Positions 6,181 to 34,042 of a DNA stretch of 64,000 bases are shown piece by piece (position 1 is the stretch's first letter; the number at the start of each line of letters is the position of its first letter). The stretch spans positions 15,004,001 through 15,068,000 of the forward strand of contig OZ249439.1 of NCBI GenBank assembly GCA_965235115.1, given 5' to 3'. Made by a program: the position numbers and the translations under genes. The notes under the pieces are model-generated. The model was not told the DNA's origin, did no database searches, and saw nothing but the letters and a program-made list of their open reading frames with translations. Origin of the DNA: Laetmonice hystrix. Its lineage: Eukaryota.

Positions 6181-9100
6181 CTCATCCTAAACCTATCTTT
6201 ATCAATACCGTATACTGTCATTGTATTGTCATCCTTGTATTATAGTGTGATCGCAGTAAGGACTCGGTGATCATCAATCGTCTAAACCTATCTATATCAA
6301 TACCGTATACTGTCATTGTACTGTCATCCGTGTATTATAGTGTGATCGCAGTAAGGAAGACTCGGTGATCATCAATCGTCTAAACCTATCTATATCAATA
6401 CCGTATACTGTCATTGTACTGTCATCCGTGTATTATAGTGTGATCGCAGTAAGGAGGACTCGGTGATCATCAATCGTCTAAACCTATCTATATCAATACC
6501 GTATACTGTCATTGTTGTCATCCGTGTATTATAGTGTGATCGCAGTAAGGACTCGGTGATCATCAATCGTCTAAACCTATCTATATCAATACCGTATACT
6601 GTCATTGTTGTCATCCTTGTATTATAGTGTGATCGCAGTAAGGACTCGGTGATCATCAATCGTCTAAACCTATCTATATCAATACCGTATACTGTCATTG
6701 TATTGTCATCCTTGTATTATAGTGTGATCGCAGTAAGGAGGACTCGGTGATCATCAATCGTCTAAACCTATCTATATCAATACCGTATACTGTCATTGTT
6801 GTCATCCTTGTATTATAGTGTGATCGCAGTAAGGACTCGGTGATCATCAATCGTCTAAACCTATCTATATCAATACCGTATACTGTCATTGTTGTCATCC
6901 TTGTAATATAGTGTGATCGCAGTAAGGACTCGGTGATCATCAATCGTCTAAACCTATCTATATCAATACCGTATACTGTCATTGTTGTCATCCTTGTATT
7001 ATAGTGTGATCGCAGTAAGGACTCGGTGATCATCAATCGTCTAAACCTATCTATATCAATACCGTATACTGTCATTGTTGTCATCCTTGTATTATAGTGT
7101 GATCGCAGTAAGGACTCGGTGATCATCAATCGTCTAAACCTATCTATATCAATACCGTATACTGTCATTGTATTGTCATCCTTGTATTATAGTGTGATCG
7201 CAGTAAGGACTCGGTGATCATCAATCGTCTAAACCTATCTATATCAATACCGTATACTGTCATTGTATTGTCATCCTTGTATTATAGTGTGATCGCAGTA
7301 AGGAGGACTCGGTGATCATCAATCATCTAAACCTATCTATATCAATACCGTATACTGTCATTGTATTGTCATCCTTGTATTATAGTGTGATCGCAGTAAG
7401 GACTCGGTGATCATCAATCGTCTAAACCTATCTATATCAATACCGTATACTGTCATTGTTGTCATCCTTGTATTATAGTGTGATCGCAGTAAGGACTCGG
7501 TGATCATCAATCGTCTAAACCTATCTATATCAATACCGTATACTGTCATTGTTGTCATCCTTGTATTATAGTGTGATCGCAGTAAGGACTCGGTGATCAT
7601 CAATCGTCTAAACCTATCTTTATCAATACCGTATACTGTCATTGTTGTCATCCTTGTATTATAGTGTGATCGCAGTAAGGAGGACTCGGTGATCATCAAT
7701 CGTCTAAACCTATCTATATCAATACCGTATACTGTCATTGTATTGTCATCCTTGTATTATAGTGTGATCGCAGTAAGGAGGACTCGGTGATCATCAATCG
7801 TCTAAACCTATCTATATCAATACCGTATACTGTCATTGTATTGTCATCCTTGTATTATAGTGTGATCGCAGTAAGGAGGACTCGGTGATCATCAATCGTC
7901 TAAACCTATCTATATCAATACCGTATACTGTCATTGTTGTCATCCTTGTATTATAGTGTGATCGCAGTAAGGACTCGGTGATCATCAATCGTCTAAACCT
8001 ATCTATATCAATACCGTATACTGTCATTGTTGTCATCCTTGTATTATAGTGTGATCGCAGTAAGGACTCGGTGATCATCAATCGTCTAAACCTATCTTTA
8101 TCAATACCGTATACTGTCATTGTTGTCATCCTTGTATTATAGTGTGATCGCAGTAAGGAGGACTCGGTGATCATCAATCGTCTAAACCTATCTATATCAA
8201 TACCGTATACTGTCATTGTATTGTCATCCTTGTATTATAGTGTGATCGCAGTAAGGAGGACTCGGTGATCATCAATCGTCTAAACCTATCTATATCAATA
8301 CCGTATACTGTCATTGTATTGTCATCCTTGTATTATAGTGTGATCGCAGTAAGGACTCGGTGATCATCAATCGTCTAAACCTATCTATATCAATACCGTA
8401 TACTGTCATTGTATTGTCATCCTTGTATTATAGTGTGATCGCAGTAAGGAGGACTCGGTGATCATCAATCGTCTAAACCTATCTATATCAATACCGTATA
8501 CTGTCATTGTATTGTCATCCTTGTATTATAGTGTGATCGCAGTAAGGACTCGGTGATCATCAATCGTCTAAACCTATCTATATCAATACCGTATACTGTC
8601 ATTGTTGTCATCCTTGTATTATAGTGTGATCGCAGTAAGGACTCGGTGATCATCAATCGTCTAAACCTATCTATATCAATACCGTATACTGTCATTGTTG
8701 TCATCCTTGTATTATAGTGTGATCGCAGTAAGGAAGACTCGGTGATCATCAATCGTCTAAACCTATCTATATCAATACCGTATACTGTCATTGTTGTCAT
8801 CCTTGTATTATAATTAGACTCGGTGATCATCAATCGTCTAAACCTATCTATATCAATACCGTATACTGTCATTGTATTGTCATCCTTGTATTATAGTGTG
8901 ATCGCAGTCAGGACTCGGTGATTATCAATCGTCTAAACCTATCTATATCAATACCGTATACTGTCATTGTTGTCATCCTTGTATTATAGTGTGATCGCAG
9001 TAAGGAGGACTCGGTGATCATCAATCGTCTAAACCTATCTATATCAATACCGTATACTGTCATTGTTGTCATCCTTGTATTATAGTGTGATCGCAGTAAG

Positions 9101-9216
9101 GACTCGGTGATCATCAATCGTCTAAACCTATCTATATCAATACCGTGTACTGTCATTGTCATCCTTGTATTATAGTGTGATCGCAGTAAGGAGGACTCGG
9201 TGATCATCAATCGTCT
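6181..9216. repeat. Tandem array, 93-98 bp unit, about 32 copies; unit = intron end + acceptor + first about 41 nt of gene A exon 9176
   Basis: Unit ...gtcatccttgtattatag|tgtgatcgcagtaagg(ag)gactcggtgatcatcaatcgtct aaacctatctatatcaataccgtatactgtcattg...; the last copy continues into the real exon. Confidence 0.97.
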
Positions 9217-9334
9217 CATTGACTCGAGCCGGAAACTATTAGTTATTGGAGGGAGCTGTATCCGGAGCGATATCAACCAATCGAAACCTTGGAAGAGATA
9301 TCACAAAGGTGTTCTCGGTAACCGCGTGCCCCAG
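9176..9334 (+). CDS. Gene A exon (CDRSKEDSVIINRLIDSSRKLLVIGGSC...VPQ), VFT lobe 1
   Basis: tattatag / gtagga boundaries, 53 codons; begins CD and ends Q in phase 0 before VSFG, like the homologous GABA-B exon. Confidence 0.8.
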
Positions 9335-11195
9335 GTAGGAACTTCAAGATGAGAGAAAGAAACCTGACCTCAATCATTATCATTTTGTAAGGAAATTTTG
9401 TAACAGCCTGTACAACACCAAATTCATATACTTTAGCCTTCTCTAACGATATTTGTTTGTTTATCAGGTCTCGTTTGGGCGTCACTTTTCGGACGATTCC
9501 TATGATATGACCGTCCGCCCGCTTGTCATCAACGCCCACCGCCACCTAGCGGATTGGTTATTAAAGGAGGGTTGGCACCAGGTGGCGCTGGTGCATGACC
9601 TGTCGTTCCCAGCCTGGCAGGTATGTGTACGGCCGACAGACATCAACTAGAAATTGTTCAGTCCGAACAGGACGTCTCCCCTTTTTTAAATCAATCACAT
9701 TATATATTGTTTGACCCAACTAGTCTGAAAGTAGTGTGTTGTGAGCTATGGCAGATTTTCTATGCCAAAAAAAACCACGATATAATAATAGTAGTAGCGC
9801 GGCCAGAGGTGTAGGCAGAACTGAGATGCGGGGGGGGGGGGGCAACCATAATATTAGTCATTCATATAGATCTATTTAGTTACTTAATTATCTATTAATT
9901 ATCTTTTTTGGGGAGGGGAGGGGTTCCAGACAACCCGGAAACCCCCCTAGCTACACCCTTGGGCCGGGGTAATATGCGGTAGTCCAAAGCGGTTTTGGGT
10001 GAATGAAAGGGTTGTGATAATGGTAGTGCGTGTTCGACTAAGCTATACCGACTGCTTGATACTGCCTGGCGCGTCAGAATGCAGGAAAGGAAGAAGGTGG
10101 TGTCGTTGGCCGGCATAAGAAGAAGATAAAATATGGGCAGCGCGGCCATCACAGAGGCACATCCTCAATGTATTTTTAGATAAGCTAATAATAAGCGAGC
10201 TATCAAAGACGGGAGTGTGACCAATGACAGCCAAGCTCTCAGTAGGTGTTACCGGCTCCTACTCGCGTCGACCCCAGAGCGAGTGAGCCGAGAACCAGCT
10301 TAGGATCTGACCTCCTATAAATAGATGCAGGCGTGGCGAGGTCAGGCACCTTGTTGCCGGGCAACGACCCCTGACCGAGTGGTGGTGGACCCTTGTTTAC
10401 GCGACACGCGAGCGTTTTACGCTGTGTGGCTGTGTGTCGGAAAGACGGCCACATAAGTCGGAAACTATTAACTGTAGAGAATAACACTTAGTGTAGCGGT
10501 GTAGGCAAAGACCTGGAGATTCTTCTCCACCAAGTTTCATAAAGATACGGTCAGGGGTTTGGGAGATATAAAAGGCTTCTCTAAGGTTGGCACGGTACTG
10601 AGGTCAAAGGTCATGAAGTGCTAAAAATAGCAAAATCCCGAGAAAATATCCACAGTTGTCTTTTCCCCAAATTAGGACTTTCTAGCCCCGGTAGTTTTTG
10701 GGCTGATGTCAAGTAAGCGCCCAACCACTTCGAAAATGTTGAAGGTCACACAGAGGTCATCTGGGGTCACACGAACGTGTCCTCCGGGAAATCTAAATTT
10801 GGCACATAGATGACCCTGCTGACCAAATTTGATGTTATTCCAGCCAGTATTTTCCGAGTTATGGCTTTGGCAAAAAAATGGCACGTGCCATAATTTTTAG
10901 ATCAGCCGCCATCTTGAAAGTTCTAGGTCAACCAAACTGGTTATCGAACTTGTCCAAGCCCCGGATGAAAGAAGGCCGACATACCAATTTTGGATCGATT
11001 CAGGCTATTTTTCTCGCGTTATCGTGATCACAGCACAAGTTGGCACATTCGTGCCACGGAAGAGGTCAAAGGTCAAATGGCACTATAATTAGAAACAAAG
11101 ATTTTTCAGAAGGTTCTGTCGGGGCATTTCAAATTTGATAACTCCCTCTCTAACAGTGGCCGAGTTATTCCAAAAAGAAGGAAATAAAAGAAACA

Positions 11196-11234
<39 letters not shown>

Positions 11235-14200
11235 CGGTCAGAAACAGCGTGCAAAACAAAACGTCTCCCCCAGCTGGGGGGAGACGTAATAAACCAGAGA
11301 AAAATCATACACAGATGATACATAAACCTAATATAAACCAGACTGTAAAACACCAGACTTACAGGGTGTTACTCGGTCGTGGTATTTATAAAGTAGAAGA
11401 ACCCCAGTCCCGTACTCTAGATCTACCGGTGGTCCCCTATAGTCTGACCGAGCCTATGTTATGACTTGAGGGTACTAATTGTCATAATGATATTTCTAAC
11501 AGGAACAGAAGATTTTACGGCATTATCTCCGTGAGAGACAGGTGAACGTTACGTTGGCCGTTGAAGATCGAACCCCACGTTTTGCCACGGTTCTCAGGGT
11601 AGGTTCACCAGCAATGCCATCCATTATCCATCACTTTCCTACAGATATTTTTTTTATAAACATATAATAAATGACAGATACAATTATAGACACTGTTTGA
11701 TTAAAGTATACACATTACAGGAGAGTATGTTGCGCGTGGTTGTGTTGTACATGAAGAGAGAGCGGTCGATGGACGTGCTCTGCCATCTGGCGAGGGAGAC
11801 CGAAACCATGCCGGGAAGGTTCGTTTGGGCGATCCTGGTGGAAGACTCGGTTAACATGCTGGAGGTCGGCTGTGCAGGCGCGGCTCTACCGCGTGACGTC
11901 GTCGTTTTCAACGTTCAAACAGCGATACCAGATTCTAAGGTACCATTAAGTTTCTTCTAGTTCACGGGTGGAAAGAATTTCAGTCTTGTTTATAGGTTAA
12001 CGTCGAGAAGCTAAGTCAGACAATTACAAGAGTTTGCAATTCGGGTAAGGATTGTCGTATAGGCTATAGACAATAAAGTCTGTTGTTTGCCACTGTCCAG
12101 GTATACCGGACGTTTACGTCAGGTGTACATGACGTCGACAACCAGGTGTTAGAGGTGACGGGACCGGACGCTGCCTATGCGCATGACGCCACCATGCTGG
12201 CGCTAGGAACACTGGGAAGGCTACCCTGGCGGCAGACAAACTCTCGAACCCAGCAAGAGTTCGCCGATCAGTTTTGGAAAGAAATGTTCAGGACCTCTCT
12301 TCACCACGGAGTAACGGTACGATATCATGTATAATGTACAATAATTCGTCACCTACAGACCAGCGTGTCGACTGTAAGCAAGAACTTTGTGTAGTGGTAA
12401 AACGGTACATGGAAAACGTTAGGTGTTATAAAGTTCATCCTTCCTATATTGTCAGAACCTACATGAGTTATTCTTGTATGTGTCAGGGCCCGTTGGTGCT
12501 TGATGACCAGATGAAAATAAGGAGGGCTATCGTCCAACTATATACATACTATGGTAGGTGCACATACGATGTTAGAGGTTGAACTACATGTATATACATA
12601 CTATGGTAGGTGCACATACGATGTTAGAGGTTGAACTATATACATACTATGGTAGGTGCACATACGATGTTAGAGGTTGAACTATATACATACTATGGTA
12701 GGTGCACATACGATGTTAGAGGTTGAACTATATACATACTATGGTAGGTGCACATACGATGTTAGAGGTTGAACTATATACATACTACGGTAGGTGCACA
12801 TACGATGTTAGAGGTTGAACTACATGTATATACATACTATGGTAGGTCCACATACGATGTTAGAGGTTGAACTACATGTATATACATACTACGGTAGGTG
12901 CACATACGATGTTAGAGGTTGGTTGAGACAATCTGGCATTTATTTCCCACCTACAAAATATCAAGCCGTATACCCATTGAACATTTGGATACTATATTCA
13001 ATAATGTTTAAATCTCTAACAGTCGCTGATCGTTTTCCCCATTCAGATGGAAAACTCGCCCTTTTCAACGCAACAGGTGAGTTCAGTAAAAGTACATCGA
13101 CTCCAAAGTTTTCTTCCCAATTCGAGGGTCCACATCCGTTATTGACAAAGTCTGAAATGAGATGCCTTCAAATGTCATTTAAATTACCGTACTTCCGGGT
13201 AGTCTAGGATGTGGTTTGTGTTTTAATACATGATTACTTTCTCCTACCTTCCTACATCCCCTAACCGGATCTCTAGGCAATCGTTCACATTGATAATTCA
13301 GAAAACAATGATGATAGGAATCTTTTTTTTTTATCAAGTCTGTAGCTATATACATTCCAACTGATTCCTGTTTGCTATGTGTCAGCCATTTTGTTACATA
13401 TATATCTGTATTCAACCTTTATAATTGGTAACCTTCACCGATGTTAACAGCCGCCGATGGGGACCAGGCGGACGAGGTGGCGGGTCGCGTGGAGCTGGAC
13501 GGGGTCCCGCTCGGCCTGCTGGCCGTCATGTGTTCACTGGCCCTGCTGGGGATCGTCTACACGTTGGCCATTATGGCCTTCAATATACTCAAACGGACTG
13601 AGAGGTAAGGACTATAACCTTAAACTGACTGAGAGGTAAGGACTGACCTTAAACCGACTGAGAGGTAAGGACTGACCTTAAACTGACTGAGAGGTAAGGA
13701 CTATAACCTTAAACTGACTGAGAGGTAAGGACTATAACCTTAAACCGACTGAGAGGTACGGACTGACCTTAAACCGACTGAGAGGTAAGGACTTACCTTA
13801 AACTGACTGGGAGGTAAGGACTTACCTTAAACTGACTACAGTGGTAAGGACTGACCTTAAACTGACTGAGAGGTACGGATTGACCTTAAACCGACTGCAG
13901 TGGTAAGGACTGAACTTAAACCGACTGAGAGGTACGGATTGACCTTAAACCGACTGCAGTGGTAAGGACTGAACTTAAACCGACTGAGAGGTACGGACTG
14001 ACCTTAAACCGACTGAGAGGTACGGACTGACCTTAAACTGACTGCAGTGGTAAGGACTGAACTTAAACCGGCTGAGAGGTACGGACTGACCTTAAACCGA
14101 CTGAGAGGTACGGACTGAACTTAAACCGACTGAGAGGTACGAACTGACCTTAAACCGACTGCAGTGGTAAGGACTGACCTTAAACTGACTGAGAGGTAAG

Positions 14201-17200
14201 GACTGACCTTAAACTAACTGAGAGGTATGGACTGAACTTAAACCGACTGAGAGGTACGGATTGACCGCTATAGTTCCATGGATTGACCTTTAACGTCCTG
14301 AAACGGAGTGAGAGGTAATGACAGACTCTATTAATATATCGGACACACCTTATCAACAACCACTCACGATATACGACACTAACGTCCGTATTTACCAACA
14401 GAATCATAAACATCAATCAATTCTGTGATCTCATTATATTGCATGCATGCACTTTTTACATAATCCCCTAACCTCACCCCACAATGAAAAAGCTATGAAA
14501 TCACAGAATCCTTTTAGTACAAGCCTAATTCCAAAGTACGTGCATTACTGTGGCAATGAATACCGCCATTACCATTAAAGATATTCTCCCGATTTTATCG
14601 CCTTTCCGGGAGACATGTGATACGTTTTTATCTTCTTAATGCAACTAGGACATAAAGTGATCAGTGGAGTGATCCTTTTTATCCTGTTTTGTTGTTAATG
14701 TCATCGATTGCAATCAATACTGTTGTTGTTTCACGCAGGATGATTAAAATGACGAGTCCGAACATGAACCTAGTCATCACCACGGGCGCCTTGCTGGGAT
14801 ATGTAGCCATAGTTACCATGGGGATCGATAGTTCGCTTGTTTCTGTGGAAACCATGGCCAAACTGCTCCAGGTAATGATGGAAACAAAAAGTTTATCAGG
14901 AAATCGTGATTCTATACGTGTAAAATAAAATAACTTTCACATGCTATTGAAGGATGTGATGAATGCTGATATGGTTTACTCCTAACTTTGTCAAGGTTCA
15001 TTGCTATGTTGCGACTAGATTTGACACATATAATAACATTGCCTGACACATATAATAGTTGACACATTGTTACTGACGACAAATAACAGTTGATTGTGTG
15101 ATTACAGGCGAGTACATTCCTCCTAGCGTTCGGATACAGTCTGGTCTTTGGCTCGTTATTTGCCAAAGCATGGAGAGTGTTTTTCATCTTCAAGAATCTC
15201 AACGCTAACGGAAAGGTACGGCGATTGTGTTGTCTGGTGATGAGTTTCAGACGCTTACAATACATATGTGTGCATGATATGTATCACATTCCCTATATAC
15301 GGTATACAAAATACTCAACCGAACCGTCCTCACTCGAGTGGTCTCTGTCTATATTCTCGAGGAATGTAATCCCAAGGCCACCTTGTCTTTTAGAATACTC
15401 GTGACGAGCACCTGTTGTGTGGGGTGATAATCCTACTGTTTGTCGACGTGGTAATCCTCCTGCCCTGGGCCACAGCCGACCCGATCACCTGCTCCAGGGT
15501 CTACCTGAGCACATCCTTCCAGGTGGGTACCTGCTCCTGTAGGCTGCTGTTCTCATGGTAACGGTAACCACTGCCATGGTAACCATCGGCAGCCGCTTTA
15601 TACAATAATCCGCACCGCCACCACCGCCACCGCCACAACCACCACCACACTTGGTATAACTCACATACCAGCGTACATATTGTATAACTCACATACCAGC
15701 GTACATATTATATAACTCACATACCAGCGTACATATTCATTCCACAAACACCTGCTCGCATTCAAACCCATCACAATCATACAATCAACCCCATCCATTT
15801 TTATATTCTCCTCACATTCAAAACTACTCAGTTGTACATTTTCATCAATATATGTGCATACATAAATATAGCCCCAGCCCACCTGCACTTGTTCATGCAT
15901 GCAATAACGATATGCCTTTCAACGCTAGGATGGGAGGGGATGGTGTCTTGCCCGAGTCGGTCCGTGATATTGGATAGTTTCAGTCCATCATTATCTCTGC
16001 CCTGAACGCCCAGTGAGGTTAACTGATCACCGTCCTTCTATTCCGTCTTATGCCACCAGGTGTCACCACCAACGGACGTGGTGTATCAATCGGACACATG
16101 CACGTCCCAGTTCCAGACGGTGTGGGTGGTGTTGATGTATGGCGTCAAGGGGTGTGTCCTAGCGGCTGGCCTTTACTTCACCTTCCAAACACGTCACGTT
16201 ACCCTGCCCACGCTGAAGGACGCCCGCGAGATATACATTATAATATATACAGCGTCCGTACTCGCCTTCCTGACTCTTCCCGTCCTCCTGACGGCACGTG
16301 TCGGAACTAGGGTCAAGTATGCAGTCGGAGCCCTGGCCATCTTCGTTACTGTCACGGCCACGCTCACACTGGCCTTTATACCAAAGGTTCGTGCCAACAC
16401 CTGCGTTTTCAACGCGTCCCCAAGGGGTCCAGATTTGCCAGACCTCAACTCTACAATTCACTCACATTGTGGCCATATCAATCAGCTACTGATAGATTAT
16501 AATGGTTGAAAATAGGGAACCACCGCTATTTAATTATGCCCGCGATAACATAATCATAAAGTTCGAAACAAGTGAGAAATATGGAAAGAAATATGAGATT
16601 TTGTCCATCTCCTTACAGATATATCTCGTTTGGAAACGCAGCGACAAGAGCTCGCCCGAATCCATCAGGTTTCGGTTTAGCGAGTCGTTGAGGCGAACAC
16701 AGCGCCACCTGGGGTCGTGCACCAGCTGCTGCTCCCTGGCGGAAGGGGAAGATAATGAAAAATATGCGCAGGAAGTGCTTGGCTCGGAAATGGACACGTT
16801 AAAAAGGACCATTAAAGAGGTAAACGACCAATTTCCCATTCAGACAGTACTATTTTAGTAACCAATTTCTAGGCCTACAGTAGGCTACGACCAATTCTGA
16901 CTCTGATTTAACATGCCCGTATCCTTGCCGCCAGGGTGGCACAGACAATGTATGAGACATTATAAGTTAACATGCCCGTATCCTTGCCGCCAGGGTGGCA
17001 CAGACAATGTATGAGACGTTATAAGTTAACATGCCCGTATCCTTGCCGCCAGGGTGGCACAGACAATGTATGAGACGTTTATTTATGTTGAATGGAGATG
17101 GAGGTATATATAGGCCTGGTTGCGTGTCTAAGACTGACACCATTATCTGCGATGGCTGACATGCCACTCGATGCCTTCATAGAAACAATAAATAGAGAGT

Positions 17201-18578
17201 ACAGGTTATACACGACTCCTCTCAGTCTGCCGATCATGTATCCCTACACGTCATATCACGACCCGGTTCTCTCATAGCACGCGCCCTCTGGCGTCGTCTG
17301 ACAGACACAAAGCCGGGTTCCGGTTCCTCCCTAGACCGAGGCCGGTATAAAACGAGATACAGGATCCTTGGTATCGAGTGAAGTCAGCCGTACAGTTCTT
17401 ACAAACTCAGCTCATGTTTACGTCGCTAACATCATTGCCGTTAACCCTTGTGTCTGTCATCATTTCCCCAGAAAGACGCCACAATACGAGAGCTGACAGA
17501 CCGGCTTTACTTCGGCACCGAGAAGAAACTCCACGAGTATATCTGTAGTCCTCGGAACCGGACAGTCCTTGGACACAGTCCTGAGGATCGACGGGCGCCA
17601 AGCTACAGCCCGGAGGACCACGTAGACCGCCGGGTGCCAAGCTACAGCCCGGAGGACCACGTAGACCGCCGGGTGCCAAGCTACAACCCGGAGGATCACG
17701 TAGACCGCCGGGTGCCAAGCTACAGCTCGGAGAACCGACGGATGTCCGGCCATGGTCCAGAGGAACACGTAGAGAGGTCCCGACGAGTGCCTGACCACAT
17801 CCCGGAGGACCACGTAGATTCCCGGGTGCCCAGTCACAACCCGGAGGACCACATGGAGAGGCCCCGCCGGTCGCGGGCCTACTCGTCCCGCCGCCGCCGG
17901 ACTCCGGCTTACCGTACCTCCAGTGAGGTCAACCAACAGAACCCTGATAGAACTGAATATCCCAGTTCCTCAGTCGACTCCTCCCCTGACACGGCCTACG
18001 ACCCCCACACTAACATGCCAGTGTACCAGCACGGGGTGAGGACTAACAGGAATCCTAACTACCCGGCAATGGCTGCCGTCACTCCGGTGGCATTGTCTGT
18101 ACATAACCTATCCCACAAACATAACCGACGACATCCTAGTCACAGACACTGGCACCCTCAACACAGTCCAGCCGAGCTGGATATCCCGTCCGTCCACACA
18201 ACCCAGCGGCCCTTCATAGAGCTCGATGTTATAGACAGTACGATAAACAGTAACGACTACATAACATCTGTGATCAATACTAAACAAAGAACACCCTCAC
18301 CTAATCATGACAGTGCCATTGACAATAACTCGCCCAGTTCTGTGGGGTCGGAGCAGGAAACTTTCCCGGACTCCACCCCCAAACGGCCCGTCCACTGTGG
18401 GGCAGGCTTCGGCCACGGCACACTGCTTGACCTTGACGCTATTGAAAACGAGGCGACAGAAAACTACACTTCCCCGGCCACTGGTTGCCAAGTCTCGGCC
18501 GGCCGATCTCCCATATCGAACGGACAAAATCAAATTCGGCCTCACTACGAGCGCCGAGTGGCGGTGTCTGAGATTTAG
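9176..18578 (+). CDS. Gene A: divergent GABA-B-family class C GPCR (degenerate Venus flytrap + 7TM + coiled coil + long tail), possibly GPR156-related; 14 exons found, 5' end missing
   Basis: Exons 9176-9334, 9468-9620, 11503-11598, 11721-11939, 12101-12316, 12487-12553, 13047-13076, 13451-13604, 14739-14871, 15108-15215, 15394-15522, 16060-16386, 16619-16819, 17472-18578 splice in frame (3099 nt). Family motifs: IKMTSPNMN, FGSLFAKAWRV, DPITC, KG..L..G.Y...TRHV, FIPK. Confidence 0.88.
9468..9620 (+). CDS. Gene A exon (VSFGRHFSDD...GWHQVALVHD...AWQ)
   Basis: ttatcag / gtatgt boundaries; aligns with gene B ISYG...GWDTVAILHQ. Confidence 0.82.
10490..11292 (+). mobile_element. Non-autonomous Helentron/HINE-like interspersed element (5' boundary approximate)
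   Basis: Ends with an (AAAG)n tract, then hairpin acgtctccccc-agctg-gggggagacgt (11261-11287) followed by aataa; internal gaggtcaaaggtca motifs twice; no ORF. Confidence 0.45.
11503..11598 (+). CDS. Gene A exon (EQKILRH...ATVLR)
   Basis: ctaacag / gtaggt boundaries, 96 nt, phase 0-0. Confidence 0.75.
11721..11939 (+). CDS. Gene A exon (ESMLRVVVLY...VLC...RFVWAIL...PDSK)
   Basis: attacag / gtacca boundaries; resembles RIII..FCE..Y.W of GABA-B VFT. Confidence 0.82.
12101..12316 (+). CDS. Gene A exon (VYRTF...AAYAHDATMLAL...HGVT)
   Basis: tgtccag / gtacga boundaries; YAxDA..LAL motif of ANF-receptor-type domains. Confidence 0.82.
12487..12553 (+). CDS. Gene A exon (GPLVLDDQMKIRRAIVQLYTYY)
   Basis: tgtcag / gtaggt boundaries; GVT|GP junction matches gene B GVS|GP. 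Confidence 0.78.
12533..12921. repeat. Minisatellite, 46/54 bp unit, about 8 copies, containing exon end + donor tatg|gtaggt
   Basis: aactatatacatactatggtaggtgcacatacgatgttagaggttg repeated; the first copy overlaps the exon ending at 12553. Confidence 0.95.
13047..13076 (+). CDS. Gene A 30-nt microexon (DGKLALFNAT); in-frame alternative acceptor at 13023
   Basis: cgttttccccattcag / gtgagt boundaries, phase 1-1, same position as a phase 1-1 exon of gene B. Confidence 0.6.
13451..13604 (+). CDS. Gene A exon, TM1 (LLAVMCSLALLGIVYTLAIMAFNILKRTER)
   Basis: ttaacag / gtaagg boundaries; hydrophobic helix ending FN...R as in GABA-B TM1. Confidence 0.88.
13595..14285. repeat. Minisatellite, 29-31 bp unit, more than 20 copies, containing exon end + donor gag|gtaagg
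   Basis: gactgagaggta(a/c)ggactgaccttaaac(c/t) repeated, starting inside the exon that ends at 13604. Confidence 0.95.
14739..14871 (+). CDS. Gene A exon, TM2 (MIKMTSPNMNLVITTGALLGY...LLQ)
   Basis: cacgcag / gtaatg boundaries; KMxSPNxN family motif. Confidence 0.9.
15108..15215 (+). CDS. Gene A exon, TM3 (ASTFLLAFGYSLVFGSLFAKAWRVFFIF)
   Basis: attacag / gtacgg boundaries; FG...KxWRV motif. Confidence 0.9.
15394..15522 (+). CDS. Gene A exon, TM4 (RDEHLL...VDVVILLPWATADPITC)
   Basis: cttttag / gtgggt boundaries; D..L....D....W...DP motif. Confidence 0.88.
15655..15738. repeat. 27-bp tandem repeat, 3 copies
   Basis: tataactcacataccagcgtacatat(t) x3. Confidence 0.85.
16060..16386 (+). CDS. 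Gene A exon, TM5-TM7 (...YGVKGCVLAAGLYFTFQTRHV...LAFIPK)
   Basis: ccaccag / gttcgt boundaries, 109 codons; class C 7TM motifs. Confidence 0.9.
16619..16819 (+). CDS. Gene A exon, proximal C-tail (IYLVWK...MDTLKRTIKE)
   Basis: cttacag / gtaaac boundaries, phase 0-0. Confidence 0.82.
16909..17080. repeat. 59-bp tandem repeat, about 3 copies
   Basis: taacatgcccgtatccttgccgccagggtggcacagacaatgtatgagac(a/g)ttataagt repeated. Confidence 0.9.
17472..18578 (+). CDS. Gene A terminal exon (KDATIRELTDRL...AVSEI*), with internal 13-aa repeats
   Basis: tttccccag acceptor; 369 codons to TAG; completes the coiled coil begun in the previous exon. Confidence 0.82.
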   Translation, partial: KDATIRELTDRLYFGTEKKLHEYICSPRNRTVLGHSPEDRRAPSYSPEDHVDRRVPSYSPEDHVDRRVPSYNPEDHVDRRVPSYSSENRRMSGHGPEEHVERSRRVPDHIPEDHVDSRVPSHNPEDHMERPRRSRAYSSRRRRTPAYRTSSEVNQQNPDRTEYPSSSVDSSPDTAYDPHTNMPVYQHGVRTNRNPNYPAMAAVTPVALSVHNLSHKHNRRHPSHRHWHPQHSPAELDIPSVHTTQRPFIELDVIDSTINSNDYITSVINTKQRTPSPNHDSAIDNNSPSSVGSEQETFPDSTPKRPVHCGAGFGHGTLLDLDAIENEATENYTSPATGCQVSAGRSPISNGQNQIRPHYERRVAVSEI

Positions 18579-20999: not shown

Positions 21000-21810
21000 T
21001 CACACATAACTAACTTCAATCTCAACCTCTCCTAAAGACTTCAGTTCTTTTTGTATTCGCGCTAGTTCTCTCTGCAGAACTTGGATTTTTCGCCTTCGTT
21101 CCGATTCCGGTAACGTCCTTCTGTGAGACGCTAGCGGGGAGACGACCTGCTGCGTCCCTCCACTGCCTCTCTTTGGTAACGTCAATTTATCACCCATCAC
21201 CACACGATGACCTTTAACGTTACGCGGATGTTTTCCCATAAAGATGCTAGGGGGCGCATTCGTCGAATGCGCCTGCGCAGTACTTACAGGAAGAGGGGGC
21301 GCGCACGCCCCCTCGAGAGACATGTCGTGCATTTCGTATTTCTCCGAGTCCTTTTTATGCTGTTGCCCCCGTATTCCTGGCTTATTTATCAGTATGGTCG
21401 CAGAATCAATAGAAGACCCCTTGGTCGCCCCTTCCTCCTCGGCCTCCCCGACCAGTAACGACTCTTTCTCCTCCATATCACCGTCCGTGCTTGACTGCCG
21501 CCGCAGTGAGGTGTACTTGGCGCCCCCTTCCGGAGCTGCTTTGGTACCCGGCGATATATAAGCGTCGGACTCGGGGCTGGAGGGACTCTGGTCCCCCCGT
21601 AACCGACCAGCCTCCAGTTCCAGCCGATCCCCAGACCGCGGGTTCTCCTCCTCCGCTGTCATAAAGTTAGAATTTTTGAAAGACATTGTATGGAAGCCAG
21701 AGTCCTGCTTCTCGAGTTTGCGTTTCTCGTCTTCAAGGCAGGAGAGGTTTATTTCCGGTAAATCGACGCAGACGTCGGCGGCGTCTGTGATGAATGTGGA
21801 CGAGTCGCAC
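21000..21810 (-). CDS. GABA-B-R3: Gene B terminal exon (CDSSTF...IQVLQRELARIQKELKSLGEVEIEVSYV*)
   Basis: Acceptor ccttttcgttgctag, phase 2 matches the previous donor; 270 codons to TGA. Confidence 0.78.
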
Positions 21811-24800
21811 CTAGCAACGAAAAGGTCTGTTAGTTCGGCTCTTAGCAACGGAAACTGCGGTTTGTTCGGCTCTGGTTGTCAACGTAAGCCAGGCGAAACT
21901 CAGAGACGGGTTGTAATACGTACTGCTCAGATTCCTTGCCAGATCATAGCCCTGGCTACCAGGTATCATTGCTTAGATATCATTTGGCATACAGGATAAT
22001 TACAAAACATCGAAAGACAAGGTTTTCTACTTCTTTAAAAAAATTATTACTCCCGACATCTACAATTACAAACATGTGGGGGTCGTGCACCTGATAAATT
22101 CCTTGCGCCTGCGCGCGCGGGGTGTAATGTCGGACTTGGTTTCCGGTAGGAGATACATGAGGTCATCTGGTACATGGTTGAACTGCTGGCCCGGGAGTTC
22201 TAGCAGTCGTTCGATACGCATTATTTCTTGGTCCAGCTGCCATATGGACACATCGACTTATATTAGCCACTGTTAATTGGATCCATTACGCTTAGCGCAA
22301 TTATAAAAACATGCGCAGTAACACATTACTTAATTTAATATATCTGACATGCATATTACCCGCAGCGATTACTGATCACGAATTGAGAACGGAGAGACTT
22401 TGCAAAACGTCGATATGTTCCTGTTAAGTTCGCCCAGGCTCCATTCTGGCCGTTTTAATGCGGGATTGTTTAACAACGACAATCGATACACAATGTTGCA
22501 TGACCGCCAAAGGCGAACGATACAGATTGTGCTGTAAAAAAAGGAGTGTAAATGAGTCAGTGTATACATAAAACAAAAATAGCCGTCTGTATTCCGCGTT
22601 ATTCAGCTCGCTATAGATGTCATTTACCAACAATATATGACCCTGGTCCCTTATAGACTATCCGTGGATTGCATGCGTTCTGCGATACACTCATCATGAA
22701 TACTGTTAGGTGGATGTTGGTGTTTGACAGAGGTGTTTGTTAGAACGGTAAACAACATTCAGATGATACGACCATTATCATGTTCACAGTGAAAGTCTTA
22801 TTACTATATAGCTATTATGGTTCGGGTTATTATGATATCTCCTTGTGTGTTCTCCTTGGACTTATCCTTGGACAATAGGTTCTACCAATGTGTCGTTAAT
22901 TAAAGTGATTGTTTCAAGACTAGTATGGCCTACAATCTATGACCTGCGTACTGGAATGTTGGGACACCATCGTTTACCAATCATTCAGTGCGGGAAATAG
23001 ACCCAAGTGAAAACAATATGATGTTACACTAAGTCAATCAGTATGTCAGCTGGTGTTTCGGTCGACCAATCACAAAAAAACGCTTTCTTTACACAGCGCC
23101 CTCTGTTGCCATTACCTGACACCATGGTCCGTCGGCGACCCGAATCAAACTTACCTCAACCAATTCACGCTTGTATACTCTATTTTGAACTTCCGCGCGA
23201 TAATACAGTTCCTTCTTCTCGTCCACCGCAAACCGTCGCGTGTTGGCCTCTACGGTGAGTCCGGCTGAGGTGATGATCGGGCTACCGTTATGTTTGATGA
23301 TAGCGTATATCTAAAAAAAGAAACCGTTTAAATCACGTGTTACCGTAGGCGATCGATGTGGGTGATGGTGGCGACGCCAGTGGCCACTGCCAGCAACTAC
23401 AAACCATTTTAACCGCTAAAACCATCAATACCCGACAGACACTTCAGGATTCCGACCATTCAAGTTCTGGATACATGCAGACTCGAGATGTCAAATATTG
23501 TCATAACCGTAGAACAGTGAAGATTTCTTTCTGACCAGCCCGATGTAGCCTGGCGCAGGACTTTATATAGCACCACAAATCCAATCAGGAAGCCGCAATA
23601 AAGTTTGATAGGCTGGTGTGTGTCATGTCACCTTCCACAGTTATATCACCTAGCACTCGGCATTAGCCTTCTGTTGGACATGTTAACGACGGCATAACCA
23701 GAGTATCTTTAATCTTCATTATGAAGAGCTGGACAACGCTATTTCGACTCCCACAATCTGTGGCTTATCAGCCGTCCTATTGGTAACGATCCTTTATATG
23801 TCCTTTATCTAACACCCGGTGGAGTATCAATCAATATGGAGGGATGTTTAATACCATTTATATGGGGTCCAGTTGGTAATGTAGCACTTTTTATATTTCA
23901 CTTGTACTGGATGACCTCAGCGGACCGATAGAACAACATGGGTAGCGTCTACTGCATAGGGCTGTGGAGGAGGTTCTGAATTACTGGCGGTCGATCATCG
24001 CCAGGCGGCCATGCTGGCAGAGGGGCGGCAATTTGAAGGATGAGTAAGTCCAGTCGATTGTATGCTCCATCATGGCCGACAGAAATAGTCACGGCTGGTT
24101 GGGTATAGTGTTGATCAGTTAATAGAACATCCTTTATCATCGCACAGTTCGATCCATGGCTACCACCTCTCTCCAACCTCTCCCCACGCTCTAAGTCACA
24201 ACGCTTGGACACAACAGTGGGCCCCCAGCTCTATAACATAACATATCAATAAATCCGAAAATTAACGCCTCTATACAGAAAGTCACTAAGGCATAAAAAC
24301 GTCTGTCTGGTATCTCGAGTGATGCATGCTAACCCTAAAAATTTACGGCTTTAGCATGTCGGGACAGTATTTCCTTACAGACGTAAAGCCCAGACTTATA
24401 GACAGATAGCGGCGCTGTGATTTGCTAATGGTAACAAAAATATGGGTTTGTAACTTTAAAGAAAGGTAAAAGAAATATCCTTACTGATAGCATTTAAACG
24501 CAGCCTACCATATATTGCGAGTATTTTCGGACGCACGTTTTTTAGACCTGATGAAGGAGGAAAGTTGCGGGTTATTAATGTTTAATATTAGCGCCACCTA
24601 GATTTATGGAGGGCAACTAAACTATGGCCGTTATTTTTAGTGTTTGTGCCGCTTTTAGCCAAAATGAAATCGTCCATCTAGCCATCCCCCATAAAATAGT
24701 AGCTTGCTTCAAGGCACGCTGCTCTCAAAAAGACGGAAGTGCCTGTGACAAAGACAAGTGTACCCTTGCTGAGGTACAAGGAAACTAAAACATTTCAACG

Positions 24801-27800
24801 TCATTCACACAGCTCTCAACATCTGAAACTGAGACATAGATGTGTAGTAAAACATTTCAACGTCATTCACACAGCTCTCAACATCTGAAACTGAGACATA
24901 GATGTGTGGTAAAACATTTCAACGTCATTCACACAGCTCTCAACATCTGAAACTGAGACATAGATGTGTGGTAAAACATTTCAACGTCATTCGCACAGCT
25001 CTCAACATCTGAAACTGAGACATAGATGTGTGGTAAAACATTTCAACGTCATTCGCACAGCTCTCAACATCTGAAACTGAGACATAGATGTGTGGTAAAA
25101 CATTTCATCGTCATTCACACAGCTCTCAACATCTGAAACTGAGACATAGATGTGTGGTAAAACATTCCAACGTCATTCACACAGCTCTCAACATCTGAAA
25201 CTGAGACATAGATGTGTGGAAAACATTTGAACGTCATTCACACAGCTCTCAACATCTGAAACTGAGACATAGATGTGTGGTAAAACATTTCAACGTCATT
25301 CACACAGCTCTCAATATCTGCAATTGAGACATAGATGTGTGGTAAAAGACAGGGTGCCATCGACTGGCTTCAAACACCACAATTATTCCAGGCCATTTGG
25401 CGTGTAAAACCATAATGGTAAAACCTCGTTTAGAGTTTTAATATCCTTGTCTCGGTATAATCTTTATTAGGCAACCCTTGGAAAAGCAGTGACGACTCAG
25501 CCCCCCCCCCCCCCCCCAACACACACACACCCCAACCCGTGGATTGCCTGCCATCTGCGGTCGATGACCAGTCAGATATCTCCATGGCCAGCAATGGCAC
25601 AACTCCTCAGTGGAGAGACAGCGGAACACATACTGTTGGAATGTTACCTGAACACCTCAGGGCAATGGGCACGGCGAGGAAAAGATGGGAGAGCTTTGAG
25701 CCGCCTTGTACGACATGACTGGGATGGATCCGACCTAACTATCCCCTGACCTACACATGACAATTCACCCTCAGTCACTGCTCGACTAACAACTTACGGG
25801 GGCAGTCGGTACGTGCCACCAACCACGGACAGCTATCCGCTGACTCGGACTGGAAGCCCTACCGACAACAGATCACCACCTCTGGGACCCACGGCCGTAT
25901 TTTGTGTTGTTTACACGACTGTTCCATCGTAACTCAGCAGGAACAATAAGACGCCGCTTGGTGGCAGCAGCTGTCACATGAGACGATGTGTCGGTTAAGG
26001 TAGCACATCTCTCCCAACGCGACCTGTTTGTCATGTAAACCCTGGCGTACAGATCACCCCACAAATCCCTACTGTCCTCCCCACAACCTCAACCTATGAC
26101 AGACCCTGTTCCTCGCTTATCATCCACCTTAAAGGAAACGAGTGAATATAAATTGATCTAAGAGTATTTGTTGTAGTCTAAAGTGCATCTAGTAATGAAG
26201 AAAGAGGGACGCATGCATGTACTAATACACAGAGTGCATGTGATAGCCATCAAAATGAAACTTCGATGATATATTTTACGTACAACAAATTACATGACAT
26301 GGAGCACTTCTCGACTCATTTCCTGTCCTGTTCCTCCAATATATTCTGTGTAGGAAGAGCAAACTGGGCTCAAAATCCTTCCTAAAATCGATTTGTTATC
26401 CTTTTTTTCAGTTATGATATTATGAAAACTGGCAGTGATATAATGATCTACAGATTATACTAGGATCTCCATGTCATTATACCGTACACAAAACGTTGTT
26501 TATATGAGACGTGACTGCGCAGACATGGAATGCCGAGATGAGTTGCGTATACAGAGAAGTATTTTCCTGAATCCATCCTCGTTTCTTTTTATGATTTCAG
26601 CACCAGTCAGTCATGGACTGTTTTCGACCTCCGGTACCACTGATGTTATACAAATGGTACCACGGAGGGTCTGCGCTAACCGTGTGGTGTAAAATATTAA
26701 CATGGAATGTGCACAGTGCTCTAATATCCTAATAAGAGATCAACGCTATAACCAACAGAAAAATAGTGTCTGCAGGTCGATAACAGATAGAGTAGCAACC
26801 GATCATTTGTCATTGTATGAAACCGTCAGAAGTCGAAATCAACCCATCAATTGGATTATTTGGAGTTTATCTTTGAAGGGGGCTAGATGGAATAAGTCAA
26901 TCAGAAAAAAATAATAGGAATCTGGATTGAGACCTCAAATATGCCCGACAAAAAGGGTCTAAAACTGGATATACATTTGTGATGAGCAGACCGCCACACA
27001 CAATCCTATTTAACTATACTACTAATCGCCTTTCTAGTTATGATCCTCAAACCATGGGTTATTATCGCACCTCAGAAGATTAATATGTAAATAGAATTAA
27101 GCCTCACTGATCTAAGCGATTACCAGGGCTCACTTCACTCCCACCAACAGAGGCGGCAAGCGTCCTGCAAGAGTGCCAAGCTCAGCGTAAAATTGTCTAA
27201 GTTAATTCGTACAATTAATTTGATGAGATCGTATTGAAATTACCGAATAGCTTGGGGACTGTCAGCTCGGACAAAGAAACGAAACATATTTAATTCATAT
27301 TAAGCAGAATCTGGAGGATGAAATGGACGCATTTGGTGCTTTTCAGACTATGGTAATTAACTTAGGGTTACTTGAGTCTAATAAAGTGAAGAGAGTTGGA
27401 GGCGTACCTTGGGTAGGAAGAGGAGACCGAGGAGGCCTGTGGTGGAGAGGATGATGAGGGCCGACACGATGGCGTACGAGAGGGTTGGTTGGTCAGTAAG
27501 GATGGAGGAGAGGGCCACCACCGTCACCGACATCAGCACCACGTTATATATGTTCATGCCGATGTACTGAGAGTCGTTCAACACCGGGATCTTCACATGG
27601 CGCGTCTCCCACGCCATGTAGACACCAAACAATAGGAGCAGACCTTTGTAGGCGTAGAAGGCCCCGAGCCACTTATCTAAGTGTGCTGAATCACACTTGG
27701 CCAACTGTGGGATGTAGAGGAGATCCGTGTCCTCGGCTGACGGCTGGCAAGTACAAATTACCACACTGTACCAAGGGCAGTATTGTAAATTACCACACTG

Positions 27801-33800: not shown

Positions 33801-34010
33801 NNNNNNNNNNNNNNNNNNNNNNNNNNNNNNNNNNNNNNNNNNNNNNNNNNNNNNNNNNNNNNNNNNNNNNNNNNNNNNNNNNNNNNNNNNNNNNNNNNNN
33901 NNNNNNNNNNNNNNNNNNNNNNNNNNNNNNNNNNNNNNNNNNNNNNNNNNNNNNNNNNNNNNNNNNNNNNNNNNNNNNNNNNNNNNNNNNCTGTTGCTCC
34001 TGCTGTTGCC

Positions 34011-34042
<32 letters not shown>

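What the first reader, a model, noticed from the sequence alone, without database searches (positions are those of the whole stretch)
9176..18578. Gene A: GABA-B-family receptor with GPR156-like 7TM features that still carries a degenerate Venus flytrap
Seen: a complete 7TM, a coiled coil (MDTLKRTIKEKDATIRELTDRL) and a VFT-homologous ectodomain of more than 300 aa in which the ligand-contact motifs are lost. GGSCIR stands where GABBR1 has GCSS, and VSFGRHFS stands where GABA-B has SYG(S/A)(S/T)SP. Established: vertebrate GPR156 is a GABA-B relative lacking the VFT. Inference from recalled sequence: DPITC in ECL2 (GPR156 DPIQC), VETMAKLLQ (METLIQ) and EKDATIREL (EKNAVIESL) resemble GPR156, although the coiled coil also resembles GABBR1. 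It could be an evolutionary intermediate before VFT loss, or an orphan receptor with a new ligand.
Basis: partly seen in the sequence, partly recalled or inferred. Interest (0 to 1): 0.72.

Follow-up and report, generated by a model that had tools for sequence, protein, structure and literature searches.

The report
GPR156-like receptor that keeps a flytrap
This is an intact, transcribed gene for a GABA-B-family receptor that shares rare membrane-domain changes with the vertebrate orphan receptor GPR156 yet still carries a worn-down ligand-binding "Venus flytrap", so it may show what GPR156 looked like before it lost that domain.

Summary
Gene A is a 14-exon, 1111-aa class C GPCR. All its introns are GT-AG, and four junctions, including flytrap-to-TM1, appear in transcript-like contigs. 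Its first coding exon lies 14 kb upstream, outside the window.

The ectodomain is a degenerate Venus flytrap (VFT):
- It scores 13.6 bits against a GABA-B VFT profile; the Lingula orthologue scores 130.
- About 32 residues of lobe 2 are missing.
- Six of eight recalled GABA-contact positions are changed.
- It is still under purifying selection (dN/dS about 0.2).

Gene A belongs to a lophotrochozoan clade (Lingula, Lineus, Tubulanus, Capitella) that lies outside GABBR1, GABBR2 and R3. ML trees put this clade next to GPR156 (UFBoot 96 and 91). Only these two groups lack the TM3 Cys 3.29, carry an extra ECL2 Cys (DPxxC) and have a hydrophobic residue after SPNxN.

The link to GPR156 is not secure:
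- AU tests reject no alternative placement.
- The grouping disappears when six signature columns are removed.
- Raw similarity is higher to GB2 and R3.

Gene A keeps the K3.50/D6.35 ionic lock that GPR156 lacks. My verdict is a new VFT-bearing variant, probably (about 55%) sister to GPR156. The scan had noted this same stretch before, but no follow-up was found.

The parts
9176..9334 (+). Coding exon 2 (VFT lobe 1; CDRSKED...GGSCIR...VPQ). Exon 1 lies outside the window at about -5499..-5167.
   Evidence: AG/GT sites conserved in the related-species locus L006. The junction 9334|9468 is seen in run X4 contigs.
9468..9620 (+). Coding exon 3 (VSFGRHFSDD...; VFT lobe 1)
   Evidence: Splice sites conserved in L006. 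The exon aligns to the GB1 SYGSSSP region.
11721..11939 (+). Coding exon 4 (ESMLRVVVLYMK...; VFT lobe 2)
   Evidence: 65% aa identity to L006. The junction 11939|12101 is seen in X4 contigs. No exon was found between 9620 and 11721 in either species.
12101..12316 (+). Coding exon 5 (...AAYAHDATML...; VFT)
12487..12553 (+). Coding exon 6 (GPLVLDDQMKIRRAIVQLYTYY; end of the VFT), phase 1 at its 3' end
   Evidence: Acceptor and donor conserved in L006. Not confirmed by RNA.
13047..13076 (+). Coding exon 7, a 30-nt micro-exon (alternative acceptor at 13023)
   Evidence: Acceptor and donor conserved in L006. The X4 contig joins 13076|13451 with only about 30 nt laid on this side, which favours the 13047 acceptor.
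13451..13604 (+). Coding exon 8 (stalk and TM1)
   Evidence: One X4 contig joins exons 7, 8 and 9.
14739..14871 (+). Coding exon 9 (ICL1 and TM2; MIKMTSPNMNL)
   Evidence: Weak Pfam 7tm_3 match.
15108..15215 (+). Coding exon 10 (TM3; Leu in place of Cys3.29; FAKAWRV carrying K3.50)
   Evidence: 97% aa identity to L006. Signature column.
15394..15522 (+). Coding exon 11 (TM4 and the start of ECL2, with DPITC)
16060..16386 (+). Coding exon 12 (rest of ECL2, TM5-TM7; D6.35 retained in TLKDA)
   Evidence: Pfam 7tm_3 at E 5.7e-14. PDB hits: GB1 52.9, GB2 50.2 and GPR156 30.5 bits.
16619..16819 (+). Coding exon 13 (post-TM7 region, Cys-rich stretch, first half of the coiled coil)
17472..18578 (+). 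Coding exon 14 (second half of the coiled coil, repeat-rich tail, C-terminal ...VSEI, stop codon)
6187..9216 (+). Tandem array of a 93-bp unit, 32 copies, in intron 1. Each unit copies the acceptor and first codons of exon 2.
12536..12921 (+). Tandem array of a 46-bp unit, 8 copies. Each unit copies the donor site of exon 6.
13591..14266 (+). Tandem array of a 29-bp unit, 23 copies. Each unit copies the donor site of exon 8.
   Evidence: RNA uses the first copy, at 13604.
9645..11287 (.). 1.6-kb high-copy repeat insertion in the intron between exons 3 and 4, absent from the contigs of the three DNA-like runs
   Evidence: The joint 9644->11288 appears in X1-X3, and repeat depth there is very high.

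Best explanation
Gene A encodes a functional 1111-aa class C GPCR. It belongs to a lophotrochozoan branch of the GABA-B family that is most probably the sister or counterpart of vertebrate GPR156. Its architecture is ancestral: signal peptide, VFT, 7TM, C-terminal coiled coil and a PDZ-type end.

Shown:
- The gene is intact and its exons are spliced as modelled.
- It is under purifying selection.
- Its 7TM lacks the TM3 Cys3.29 that normally ties ECL2 to TM3 and has a second ECL2 cysteine instead, as in GPR156.
- Its VFT has lost the recalled GABA-contact residues and one helix-strand unit of lobe 2.

Inferred:
- It does not bind GABA.
- The ectodomain serves dimer geometry, or binds another ligand or protein.
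- The coiled coil mediates homo- or heterodimerisation.
- Because K3.50 and D6.35 are retained, the receptor is probably held inactive and regulated, rather than constitutively active like GPR156.
- Under this reading the loss of the Cys3.29 disulfide preceded the loss of the VFT and of the ionic lock in the GPR156 lineage.
For: Gene model:
- 14 exons, all GT-AG, one open frame.
- Splice sites are conserved in a related species.
- Run X4 contigs show four junctions, including exon 7|8|9, which links the VFT to TM1 and TM2.

Selection: pN 0.28 against pS 0.68 in the ectodomain, and dN/dS about 0.20, 0.12 and 0.06 for the ectodomain, 7TM and tail.

Clade:
- The closest proteins are Lingula, Capitella, Tubulanus and Lineus.
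- Clade support is 100/99, separate from the GB1, GB2 and R3-like clades.

GPR156 link:
- The split {clade A + GPR156} has UFBoot 96 and SH-aLRT 80 under LG+C20 PMSF, and 91/60.5 under LG+F+G4 on a reduced set.
- The Cys3.29 column holds no Cys in 7/7 clade A and 5/5 GPR156 sequences, and Cys in all 43 other sequences that have a residue there.
- The DPxxC cysteine occurs only in these 12 sequences.
- A hydrophobic residue after SPNxN occurs only in these 12.
- The paper PMC11621567 describes the absence of the C3.29-ECL2 disulfide (I120) as unprecedented among class C GPCRs.
- The Capitella orthologue hits shrew GPR156 at 108 bits, E 1.5e-25.
- Its nearest protein-language-model cluster is GPR156, score 0.93.

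VFT:
- Gene A's ectodomain matches the Lingula ectodomain at E 9e-19.
- The Lingula protein matches Pfam ANF_receptor at E 1.5e-19.
- Its model matches GB1 and GB2 VFT structures at E 1e-20, TM 0.72.
- Contact positions are changed: W65E, S130I, S153 gap/H, H170R, Y250K and W278E.

Ionic lock: retained in gene A, lost in GPR156.
Against: - AU tests do not reject clade A with GB2, clade A with R3, or GPR156 with GB2, GB1+GB2 or R3 (p 0.20-0.49).
- After six signature columns are removed, the clade A + GPR156 split is no longer recovered.
- Both groups sit on long stems (about 1.3 and 2.6 substitutions per site), so long-branch attraction is possible.
- An unbiased count finds only 2 exclusive shared states and 3 shared losses. 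Three shared losses may be no more than chance overlap, since GPR156 has lost about 13 conserved residues.
- Gene A's 7TM scores higher against lamprey GB2 (164 bits) than against GPR156 (about 100).
- In this genome mouse GPR156 hits the R3-like neighbour better than gene A, 41 against 28 bits.
- The coiled-coil region alone finds neither GPR156 nor GABA-B chains in the PDB.
- Only amniote GPR156 sequences could be obtained.
- Exon 1 and the junctions 1|2, 3|4, 5|6, 6|7 and those after exon 9 have no RNA support.
- No functional claim is tested.
Confidence: 0.55

Rival explanations
1. Gene A belongs to a lophotrochozoan-specific, fast-evolving GABA-B-like paralogue. It may descend from a local duplication of the R3-like or GB2-like gene. 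Its resemblance to GPR156 would then be long-branch attraction plus convergent rewiring of the ECL2 disulfide.
For:
- AU tests allow clade A with R3 (p 0.31) and with GB2 (p 0.24-0.47).
- Removing six columns dissolves the GPR156 grouping.
- Raw similarity favours GB2 and R3.
Against: - ML trees under two models prefer GPR156.
- The new cysteine sits at exactly the same ECL2 position in both groups and in none of 45 other family members, together with loss of Cys3.29.
- The R3-like clade already includes fly and sea-urchin members and excludes clade A at 100/98.
Confidence: 0.33
2. This is a rival on mechanism and is compatible with either phylogeny. Gene A is a non-ligand-binding partner subunit, in the manner of GB2. 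It would pair through its coiled coil with a GABA-binding GB1-type or R3-type subunit and supply G-protein coupling or trafficking.
For: - The VFT has lost its contact residues, as in GB2.
- A heptad coiled coil follows TM7 and is conserved.
- The ionic lock K3.50/D6.35 is retained, as in GB2.
- RxR-type stretches (RRSR, RRRR) occur in the tail.
Against: - No pairing was tested.
- The coiled coil has no detectable sequence match to the GB1 or GB2 coiled-coil chains.
- The genome already has a conventional GB2 (L004, 77% identity to the Lingula and Octopus GB2 TM5-7 region).
Confidence: 0.3
3. Gene A is a decaying gene or pseudogene, and its flytrap exons are relics that are no longer used.
For: The ectodomain scores only 13.6 bits against a GABA-B VFT profile and lacks about 32 residues. 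Tandem arrays and a transposon-like insertion sit in its introns.
Against: - The open frame is uninterrupted over 14 exons.
- Splice sites and frame are conserved in a second species, with pN well below pS in the ectodomain.
- Spliced contigs join ectodomain exons to each other and to TM1.
Confidence: 0.02

Closest known systems
GPR156 (vertebrate orphan class C GPCR, GABA-B-related)
   Same: - No Cys at 3.29 (Leu in gene A, Ile in GPR156).
- An extra ECL2 cysteine in DPxxC.
- A hydrophobic residue after SPNxN in TM2, and Tyr/Phe in place of the His of RVH in TM3.
- An EK(D/N)A.I stretch after TM7.
- ML sister position.
   Different: - Gene A has a signal peptide and an ectodomain of about 370 aa; GPR156 has a 45-aa N-terminus.
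- Gene A keeps D6.35, so the ionic lock can form. GPR156 has lost it, which the structure paper links to constitutive activity.
- Gene A keeps FIPK, where GPR156 has FIPQ, and several other conserved residues that GPR156 lost.
- Overall identity is low, with a 7TM score of about 100 bits.
GABA-B receptor subunit 2 (GABBR2 / GB2)
   Same: - VFT that does not bind GABA, 7TM, coiled coil and ionic lock.
- IKM(T/S)SPN motif.
- Highest raw 7TM score among vertebrate proteins (164 bits to lamprey GB2).
- NCBI names the Lingula orthologue GABBR2.
   Different: - Gene A lies outside the GB2 clade, which contains Lingula, Octopus, insect and lamprey GB2 at 99/97.
- Gene A lacks Cys3.29 and the WETR glutamate.
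- The genome has its own conventional GB2.
Insect-type GABA-B-R3 clade (here Sarcophaga and sea-urchin proteins, and gene B of this window)
   Same: An orphan GABA-B-family receptor with a VFT and a long tail. It is the immediate chromosomal neighbour of gene A.
   Different: It forms a separate clade at 100/98 that keeps Cys3.29, the SPNLNN asparagine and WETRHVKIPALNDS.
Lingula anatina XP_013398232.1 (annotated GABBR2; P0007)
   Same: It is an orthologue with the same exon-level architecture, the same 7TM signatures, the same coiled coil KEKD.SIRELTDRLF and a similar C-terminal S-x-V/I end.
   Different: The Lingula VFT is complete and clearly recognisable (ANF_receptor E 1.5e-19; 130 bits against 13.6 bits for gene A). 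It keeps the lobe-2 helix and strand that gene A lacks.

Membership tests
Class C GPCR, GABA-B family | Seven-helix domain matching Pfam 7tm_3, closest to GABA-B chains | tested here: met
   The TM5-7 exon matches PF00003 at E 5.7e-14. The top PDB hits are GB1 and GB2. All seven helices are encoded in frame.
Class C GPCR, GABA-B family | Venus flytrap ectodomain (ANF_receptor / periplasmic-binding fold) | tested here: inconclusive
   Single exons of gene A give no Pfam hit. The spliced ectodomain scores 13.6 bits against a local GABA-B VFT profile, above all 200 shuffles (maximum 5.1). Homology is firm only through the Lingula orthologue (E 9e-19 to gene A; ANF_receptor E 1.5e-19; model matches the GB1 VFT at E 1e-20). 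The spliced gene A protein could not be folded with these tools.
Class C GPCR, GABA-B family | C-terminal coiled coil after TM7 | tested here: inconclusive
   A heptad-spaced hydrophobic pattern of about 28 aa is conserved in all orthologues. There is no significant match to solved coiled-coil chains, and no coiled-coil predictor was available.
GABBR1 (GABA-binding subunit) | GABA-contact residues of the VFT (W65, S130, G151, S153, H170, Y250, W278, E349; the list is recalled from the 2013 GB1b crystal structures) | tested here: not met
   Only G151 is kept, and E349 becomes D. The others are E, I, gap/H, R, K and E.
GABBR1 / GABBR2 / R3 | Placement inside the respective clade | tested here: not met
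   The GB1 (99/90), GB2 (99/97) and R3-like (100/98) clades all exclude gene A. A sister relation to GB2 or R3 is not rejected by AU tests.
GPR156 | No VFT and a short N-terminus (about 45 aa) | tested here: not met
   Gene A has about 400 aa before TM1, encoded by seven exons. A VFT-less relative does exist in the clade: P0032 has 27 aa before TM1 and stop codons upstream.
GPR156 | Absence of the conserved Cys3.29-ECL2 disulfide | tested here: met
   Leu stands at the Cys3.29 column in gene A. No clade A or GPR156 sequence has Cys there, and every other sequence with a residue there does. The feature is described for GPR156 in PMC11621567.
GPR156 | Loss of the ionic lock (no acidic residue at 6.35) | tested here: not met
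   Gene A and all clade A members keep the Asp that aligns with GB2 D688, and they keep K3.50. GPR156 lacks it.
GPR156 | Phylogenetic sister or orthologue relation | tested here: inconclusive
   ML sister at 96/80 and 91/60.5. AU tests reject no alternative, and the split is lost without six signature columns.
GPR156 | High constitutive Gi/o activity as a homodimer | not testable with these tools
   This needs expression and BRET or cAMP assays.

The most novel reading that the evidence does not exclude
Clade A, including gene A, is the true protostome orthologue of GPR156. The ancestral GPR156 would then have been a full GABA-B-type receptor with VFT, coiled coil and ionic lock. The Cys3.29 disulfide was lost first. 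The VFT then decayed and was lost independently in chordates and in some lophotrochozoan lineages. Gene A, with its truncated lobe 2, and the VFT-less transcript P0032 would be stages of that process. This would give GPR156 research a tractable set of natural intermediates and a place to look for an ancestral ligand or partner.
Probability: 0.5. Interest if true: 0.72.

Novelty: new variant of a known kind. Interest (0 to 1): 0.58.

Why it matters
GPR156 is an orphan receptor that is required for hair-cell orientation and hearing. Structure papers treat it as unusual among class C GPCRs because it lacks a flytrap, the Cys3.29-ECL2 disulfide and the ionic lock. I found no open paper that describes an invertebrate relative still carrying a flytrap. 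The only invertebrate GPR156-like proteins mentioned are ascidian ones, and those also lack it.

If clade A is the GPR156 counterpart, three things follow:
- It orders the three losses, with the disulfide going first.
- It shows the flytrap eroding under continued selection.
- It offers receptors in which the roles of ectodomain, disulfide and ionic lock in constitutive activity can be separated experimentally.

If it is not, the clade is still an undescribed fourth type of GABA-B-family receptor in lophotrochozoans, currently annotated as 'GABBR2' or 'uncharacterized'.

Tried and rejected
- Pfam on single ectodomain exons gave no meaningful hits.
- The word-indexed homologue search with the Lingula 7TM returned only 4 proteins. 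The same search with Capitella returned the first GPR156 sequence. The follow-up search listed only mammal and bird GPR156, so the GPR156 stem could not be broken with fish, tunicate or amphioxus sequences.
- The coiled-coil region alone found no GPR156 or GABA-B hit in the PDB.
- AU tests of six alternative topologies rejected none of them. Three further constraints (clade A with GB1, clade A with GB1+GB2, GPR156 with GB1) did not finish in time.
- A tree without six signature columns lost the clade A + GPR156 split.
- The reciprocal-best-hit test failed in both directions because both lineages evolve fast.
- I searched for an exon between 9620 and 11721. None was found in either species, and most of that intron is a polymorphic repeat insertion.
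- No run is on record as RNA. Only the small run X4, of unrecorded library type, behaved like a transcriptome, at depth 4-7.
- The spliced gene A protein could not be passed to Pfam, folding or database tools, which take only unspliced references. The Lingula orthologue was folded instead.
- The pseudogene reading was rejected.
Full report
**What is there.** The + strand between 9176 and 18578 carries 13 coding exons of one gene.
- Open-frame scans, tblastn with the Lingula, Capitella and Tubulanus proteins, and comparison with two loci of a related species (L006, L007) fixed every exon border.
- The first coding exon is not in the window. It lies at about -5499..-5167 (G000:C4, about 14998502-14998834).
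- Exon 1 encodes a start Met, a signal-peptide-like stretch and VDVLVLLPLTGPEE.... This matches the start of the Lingula and Tubulanus flytraps (E 8.6e-5 and 0.018 in a 23-kb search). It ends in NDTR|GTAAGT, in phase with exon 2.
- The spliced product is 1111 aa from 14 exons, all introns are GT-AG and there is no internal stop.

**Is it used?**
- No run is on record as RNA.
- One small run of unrecorded type (X4) gives contigs that skip exactly the predicted introns: 9334|9468, 11939|12101, 13076|13451 and 13604|14739.
- One contig joins the last ectodomain micro-exon to TM1 and TM2.
- Depth is low (4-7), and the junctions 1|2, 3|4, 5|6, 6|7 and everything after exon 9 remain unconfirmed.
- Against the related species, non-synonymous differences are far below synonymous ones in the ectodomain (pN 0.28, pS 0.68; dN/dS about 0.20). 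The values are 0.12 for the 7TM and 0.06 for conserved tail blocks. dS is saturated, so these ratios are rough.
- The gene is therefore not a relic.

**The ectodomain.**
GGSCIR aligns with GB1 GCSS, and VSFGRHFS aligns with SYGSSSP.
- I checked eight GB1 GABA-contact positions; the list is recalled from the 2013 GB1b ectodomain structures. Gene A keeps G151 and has D for E349. The others are W65E, S130I, S153 gap/H, H170R, Y250K and W278E.
The spliced ectodomain scores 13.6 bits against a profile of 24 GABA-B-family flytraps. That is above all 200 shuffles (maximum 5.1), but the Lingula, Lineus and Tubulanus orthologues score 130, 66 and 36.
- Homology is secure through the Lingula protein. 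Gene A matches its ectodomain at E 9e-19. The Lingula protein matches ANF_receptor at E 1.5e-19. Its AlphaFold model (pLDDT 75, pTM 0.77) matches GB1 and GB2 flytrap structures at E 1e-20, TM 0.72.
- Gene A and its sister species splice exon 3 directly to exon 4. This removes about 32 residues that form a helix and a strand of lobe 2 in the Lingula model.
- Most of that intron is a 1.6-kb high-copy insertion that is absent from the DNA-like runs, so no exon is hidden there.

**Family placement.**
- The TM5-7 exon finds a distinct set of close relatives (E 1e-17 to 1e-41) before the bulk of the GABA-B family. The named ones are lophotrochozoan: Lingula ('GABBR2'), Capitella (hypothetical), Tubulanus (uncharacterized) and Lineus ('GABBR2-like').
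- A careful ML tree of 55 7TM domains (277 columns, LG+C20+F+G4 PMSF) recovers GB1 (99/90), GB2 (99/97), an R3-like clade with fly and sea-urchin members (100/98), GPR156 (100/100) and clade A with gene A (100/99).
- The same tree has a split uniting clade A with GPR156 at UFBoot 96 and SH-aLRT 80. A quick tree rooted on a fungal relative shows the same pairing at 85.
- A reduced 42-taxon set under LG+F+G4 also gives the pairing, at 91/60.5.

**Signature residues.**
- Across the 57-sequence alignment (the 55 tree sequences plus two outgroup sequences dropped from the careful tree), the TM3 cysteine is absent from all 7 clade A and all 5 GPR156 sequences. It is present in every other sequence that has a residue there, including the fungal one.
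- A cysteine in the ECL2 motif DPxxC occurs in exactly those 12 sequences and nowhere else.
- The residue after SPNxN in TM2 is V, I or L in those 12, and N or D in 41 of the 45 others (A, T, C and T in the other four).
- The GPR156 residue at the first column is Ile. [quoted passage not shown]

**Why the GPR156 link is still not secure.**
- AU tests reject none of the alternatives: clade A with GB2 or R3, and GPR156 with GB2, GB1+GB2 or R3 (p 0.20-0.49, delta lnL 1.3-17).
- Without six signature columns the split is not recovered. GPR156 then attaches at the node next to clade A plus two unnamed sequences.
- An unbiased count finds only 2 exclusive shared states and 3 shared losses for the pair. 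Other pairs have 0-2. Given how many conserved residues GPR156 has lost, three shared losses may be chance.
- Raw similarity points elsewhere. Gene A's 7TM scores 164 bits to lamprey GB2 and about 100 to GPR156. Mouse GPR156 hits the neighbouring R3-like gene (41 bits) better than gene A (28 bits) in this genome.
- The coiled-coil similarity is not significant on its own.
- Both stems are long, and only amniote GPR156 sequences could be retrieved.
- I put the sister relation at about 55%.

**How it probably works.**
- Shown: the architecture (signal peptide, degenerate VFT, 7TM, conserved heptad stretch, long repeat-rich tail ending in -VSEI), and the 7TM states listed above.
- Unlike GPR156, clade A keeps K3.50 and the Asp aligned with GB2 D6.35. 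The structure paper attributes part of GPR156's constitutive activity to loss of this ionic lock.
- Inferred: no GABA binding. The ectodomain is kept for dimer geometry or for another ligand or partner. ECL2 is freed from TM3 as in GPR156, with an intra-loop disulfide possible. Dimerisation goes through the coiled coil. The basal state is regulated rather than constitutive. None of this is tested.
- A GB2-like role as a silent partner subunit is a live alternative.

**Flytrap loss inside the clade.**
- P0032 comes from a 2856-nt contig with one uninterrupted 797-aa frame. It has stop codons in all frames upstream of its Met and only 27 residues before TM1.
- Tubulanus keeps only half of the ANF profile.
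- The Capitella model starts just before TM1, but it also contains what looks like a retained intron and may be incomplete.
- Together with gene A's truncated lobe 2, this suggests the flytrap is dispensable or eroding across the clade, which parallels GPR156.

**Context.**
- Gene A lies tail to tail with an R3-like gene on the minus strand.
- The genome also has a conventional GB2 (L004).
- Three introns of gene A begin or end with tandem arrays whose unit copies the adjacent splice site. RNA uses the first copy at exon 8.

**Novelty.**
- Full-text searches found no description of an invertebrate GPR156 relative with a flytrap. The ascidian GPR156-like proteins lack it.
- I rate this a new variant of a known kind.
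- N runs at 33629-33990 and 63559-63776 were left untouched.

Noticed in passing
window 6187-9216, 12536-12921, 13591-14266: Three tandem arrays (93 bp x32, 46 bp x8, 29 bp x23) each abut an exon of gene A. Each repeats that exon's splice site: the acceptor of exon 2, the donor of exon 6 and the donor of exon 8. RNA-like contigs use the exon-proximal donor at 13604. Why splice-site-bearing units were amplified three times in one gene is unexplained.
   Followed up: partly
window 9645-11287: A 1.6-kb insertion of a very high-copy repeat in the intron between exons 3 and 4. It is absent (joint 9644->11288) from contigs of the three DNA-like runs of the same sample, so it is a structural polymorphism or haplotype difference.
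   Followed up: partly
window about 21000-37000, minus strand (TM5-7 exon 27408-27728, TM3 exon about 30974-31177, last exon 21000-21848): Gene B is a GABA-B-R3-like receptor (55% identity to a fly R3-type protein over TM5-7). It lies tail to tail with gene A, 2.4 kb away, and ends in ...EVSYV. The called genes downstream of gene A in L006 and L007 suggest the arrangement is conserved in the related species.
   Followed up: partly
L010 (JGI sample 3300036111, 2856 nt), protein P0032: A transcript-like contig encodes a 797-aa clade A receptor with only 27 residues before TM1 and stop codons upstream in all frames. This is a naturally flytrap-less relative of gene A, of unknown organism.
   Followed up: partly
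window 17540-17800 (last exon of gene A): The cytoplasmic tail holds about five tandem copies of a peptide, SYSPEDHVDRRVP, followed by Arg-rich stretches (RRSR, RRRR) that resemble RxR retention motifs.
   Followed up: no
G000 contigs C7, C2, C29, C12, C3, C18 and others: Mouse GPR156 TM1-TM3 weakly hits many long uninterrupted frames of 550-790 aa scattered over the genome. These may be an expansion of intronless class C-like receptors.
   Followed up: no
G000:C4, about 38.8 kb beyond the window end: An earlier scan note reports a third GABA-B receptor gene with a mucin-like N-terminal extension there. With genes A and B it would make a cluster of three family members within about 120 kb.
   Followed up: no
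G000:C11:18520862-18524146 (L005): A GB2-like TM5-7 match with three in-frame stops (2 TGA, 1 TAA), possibly a pseudogene copy.
   Followed up: no
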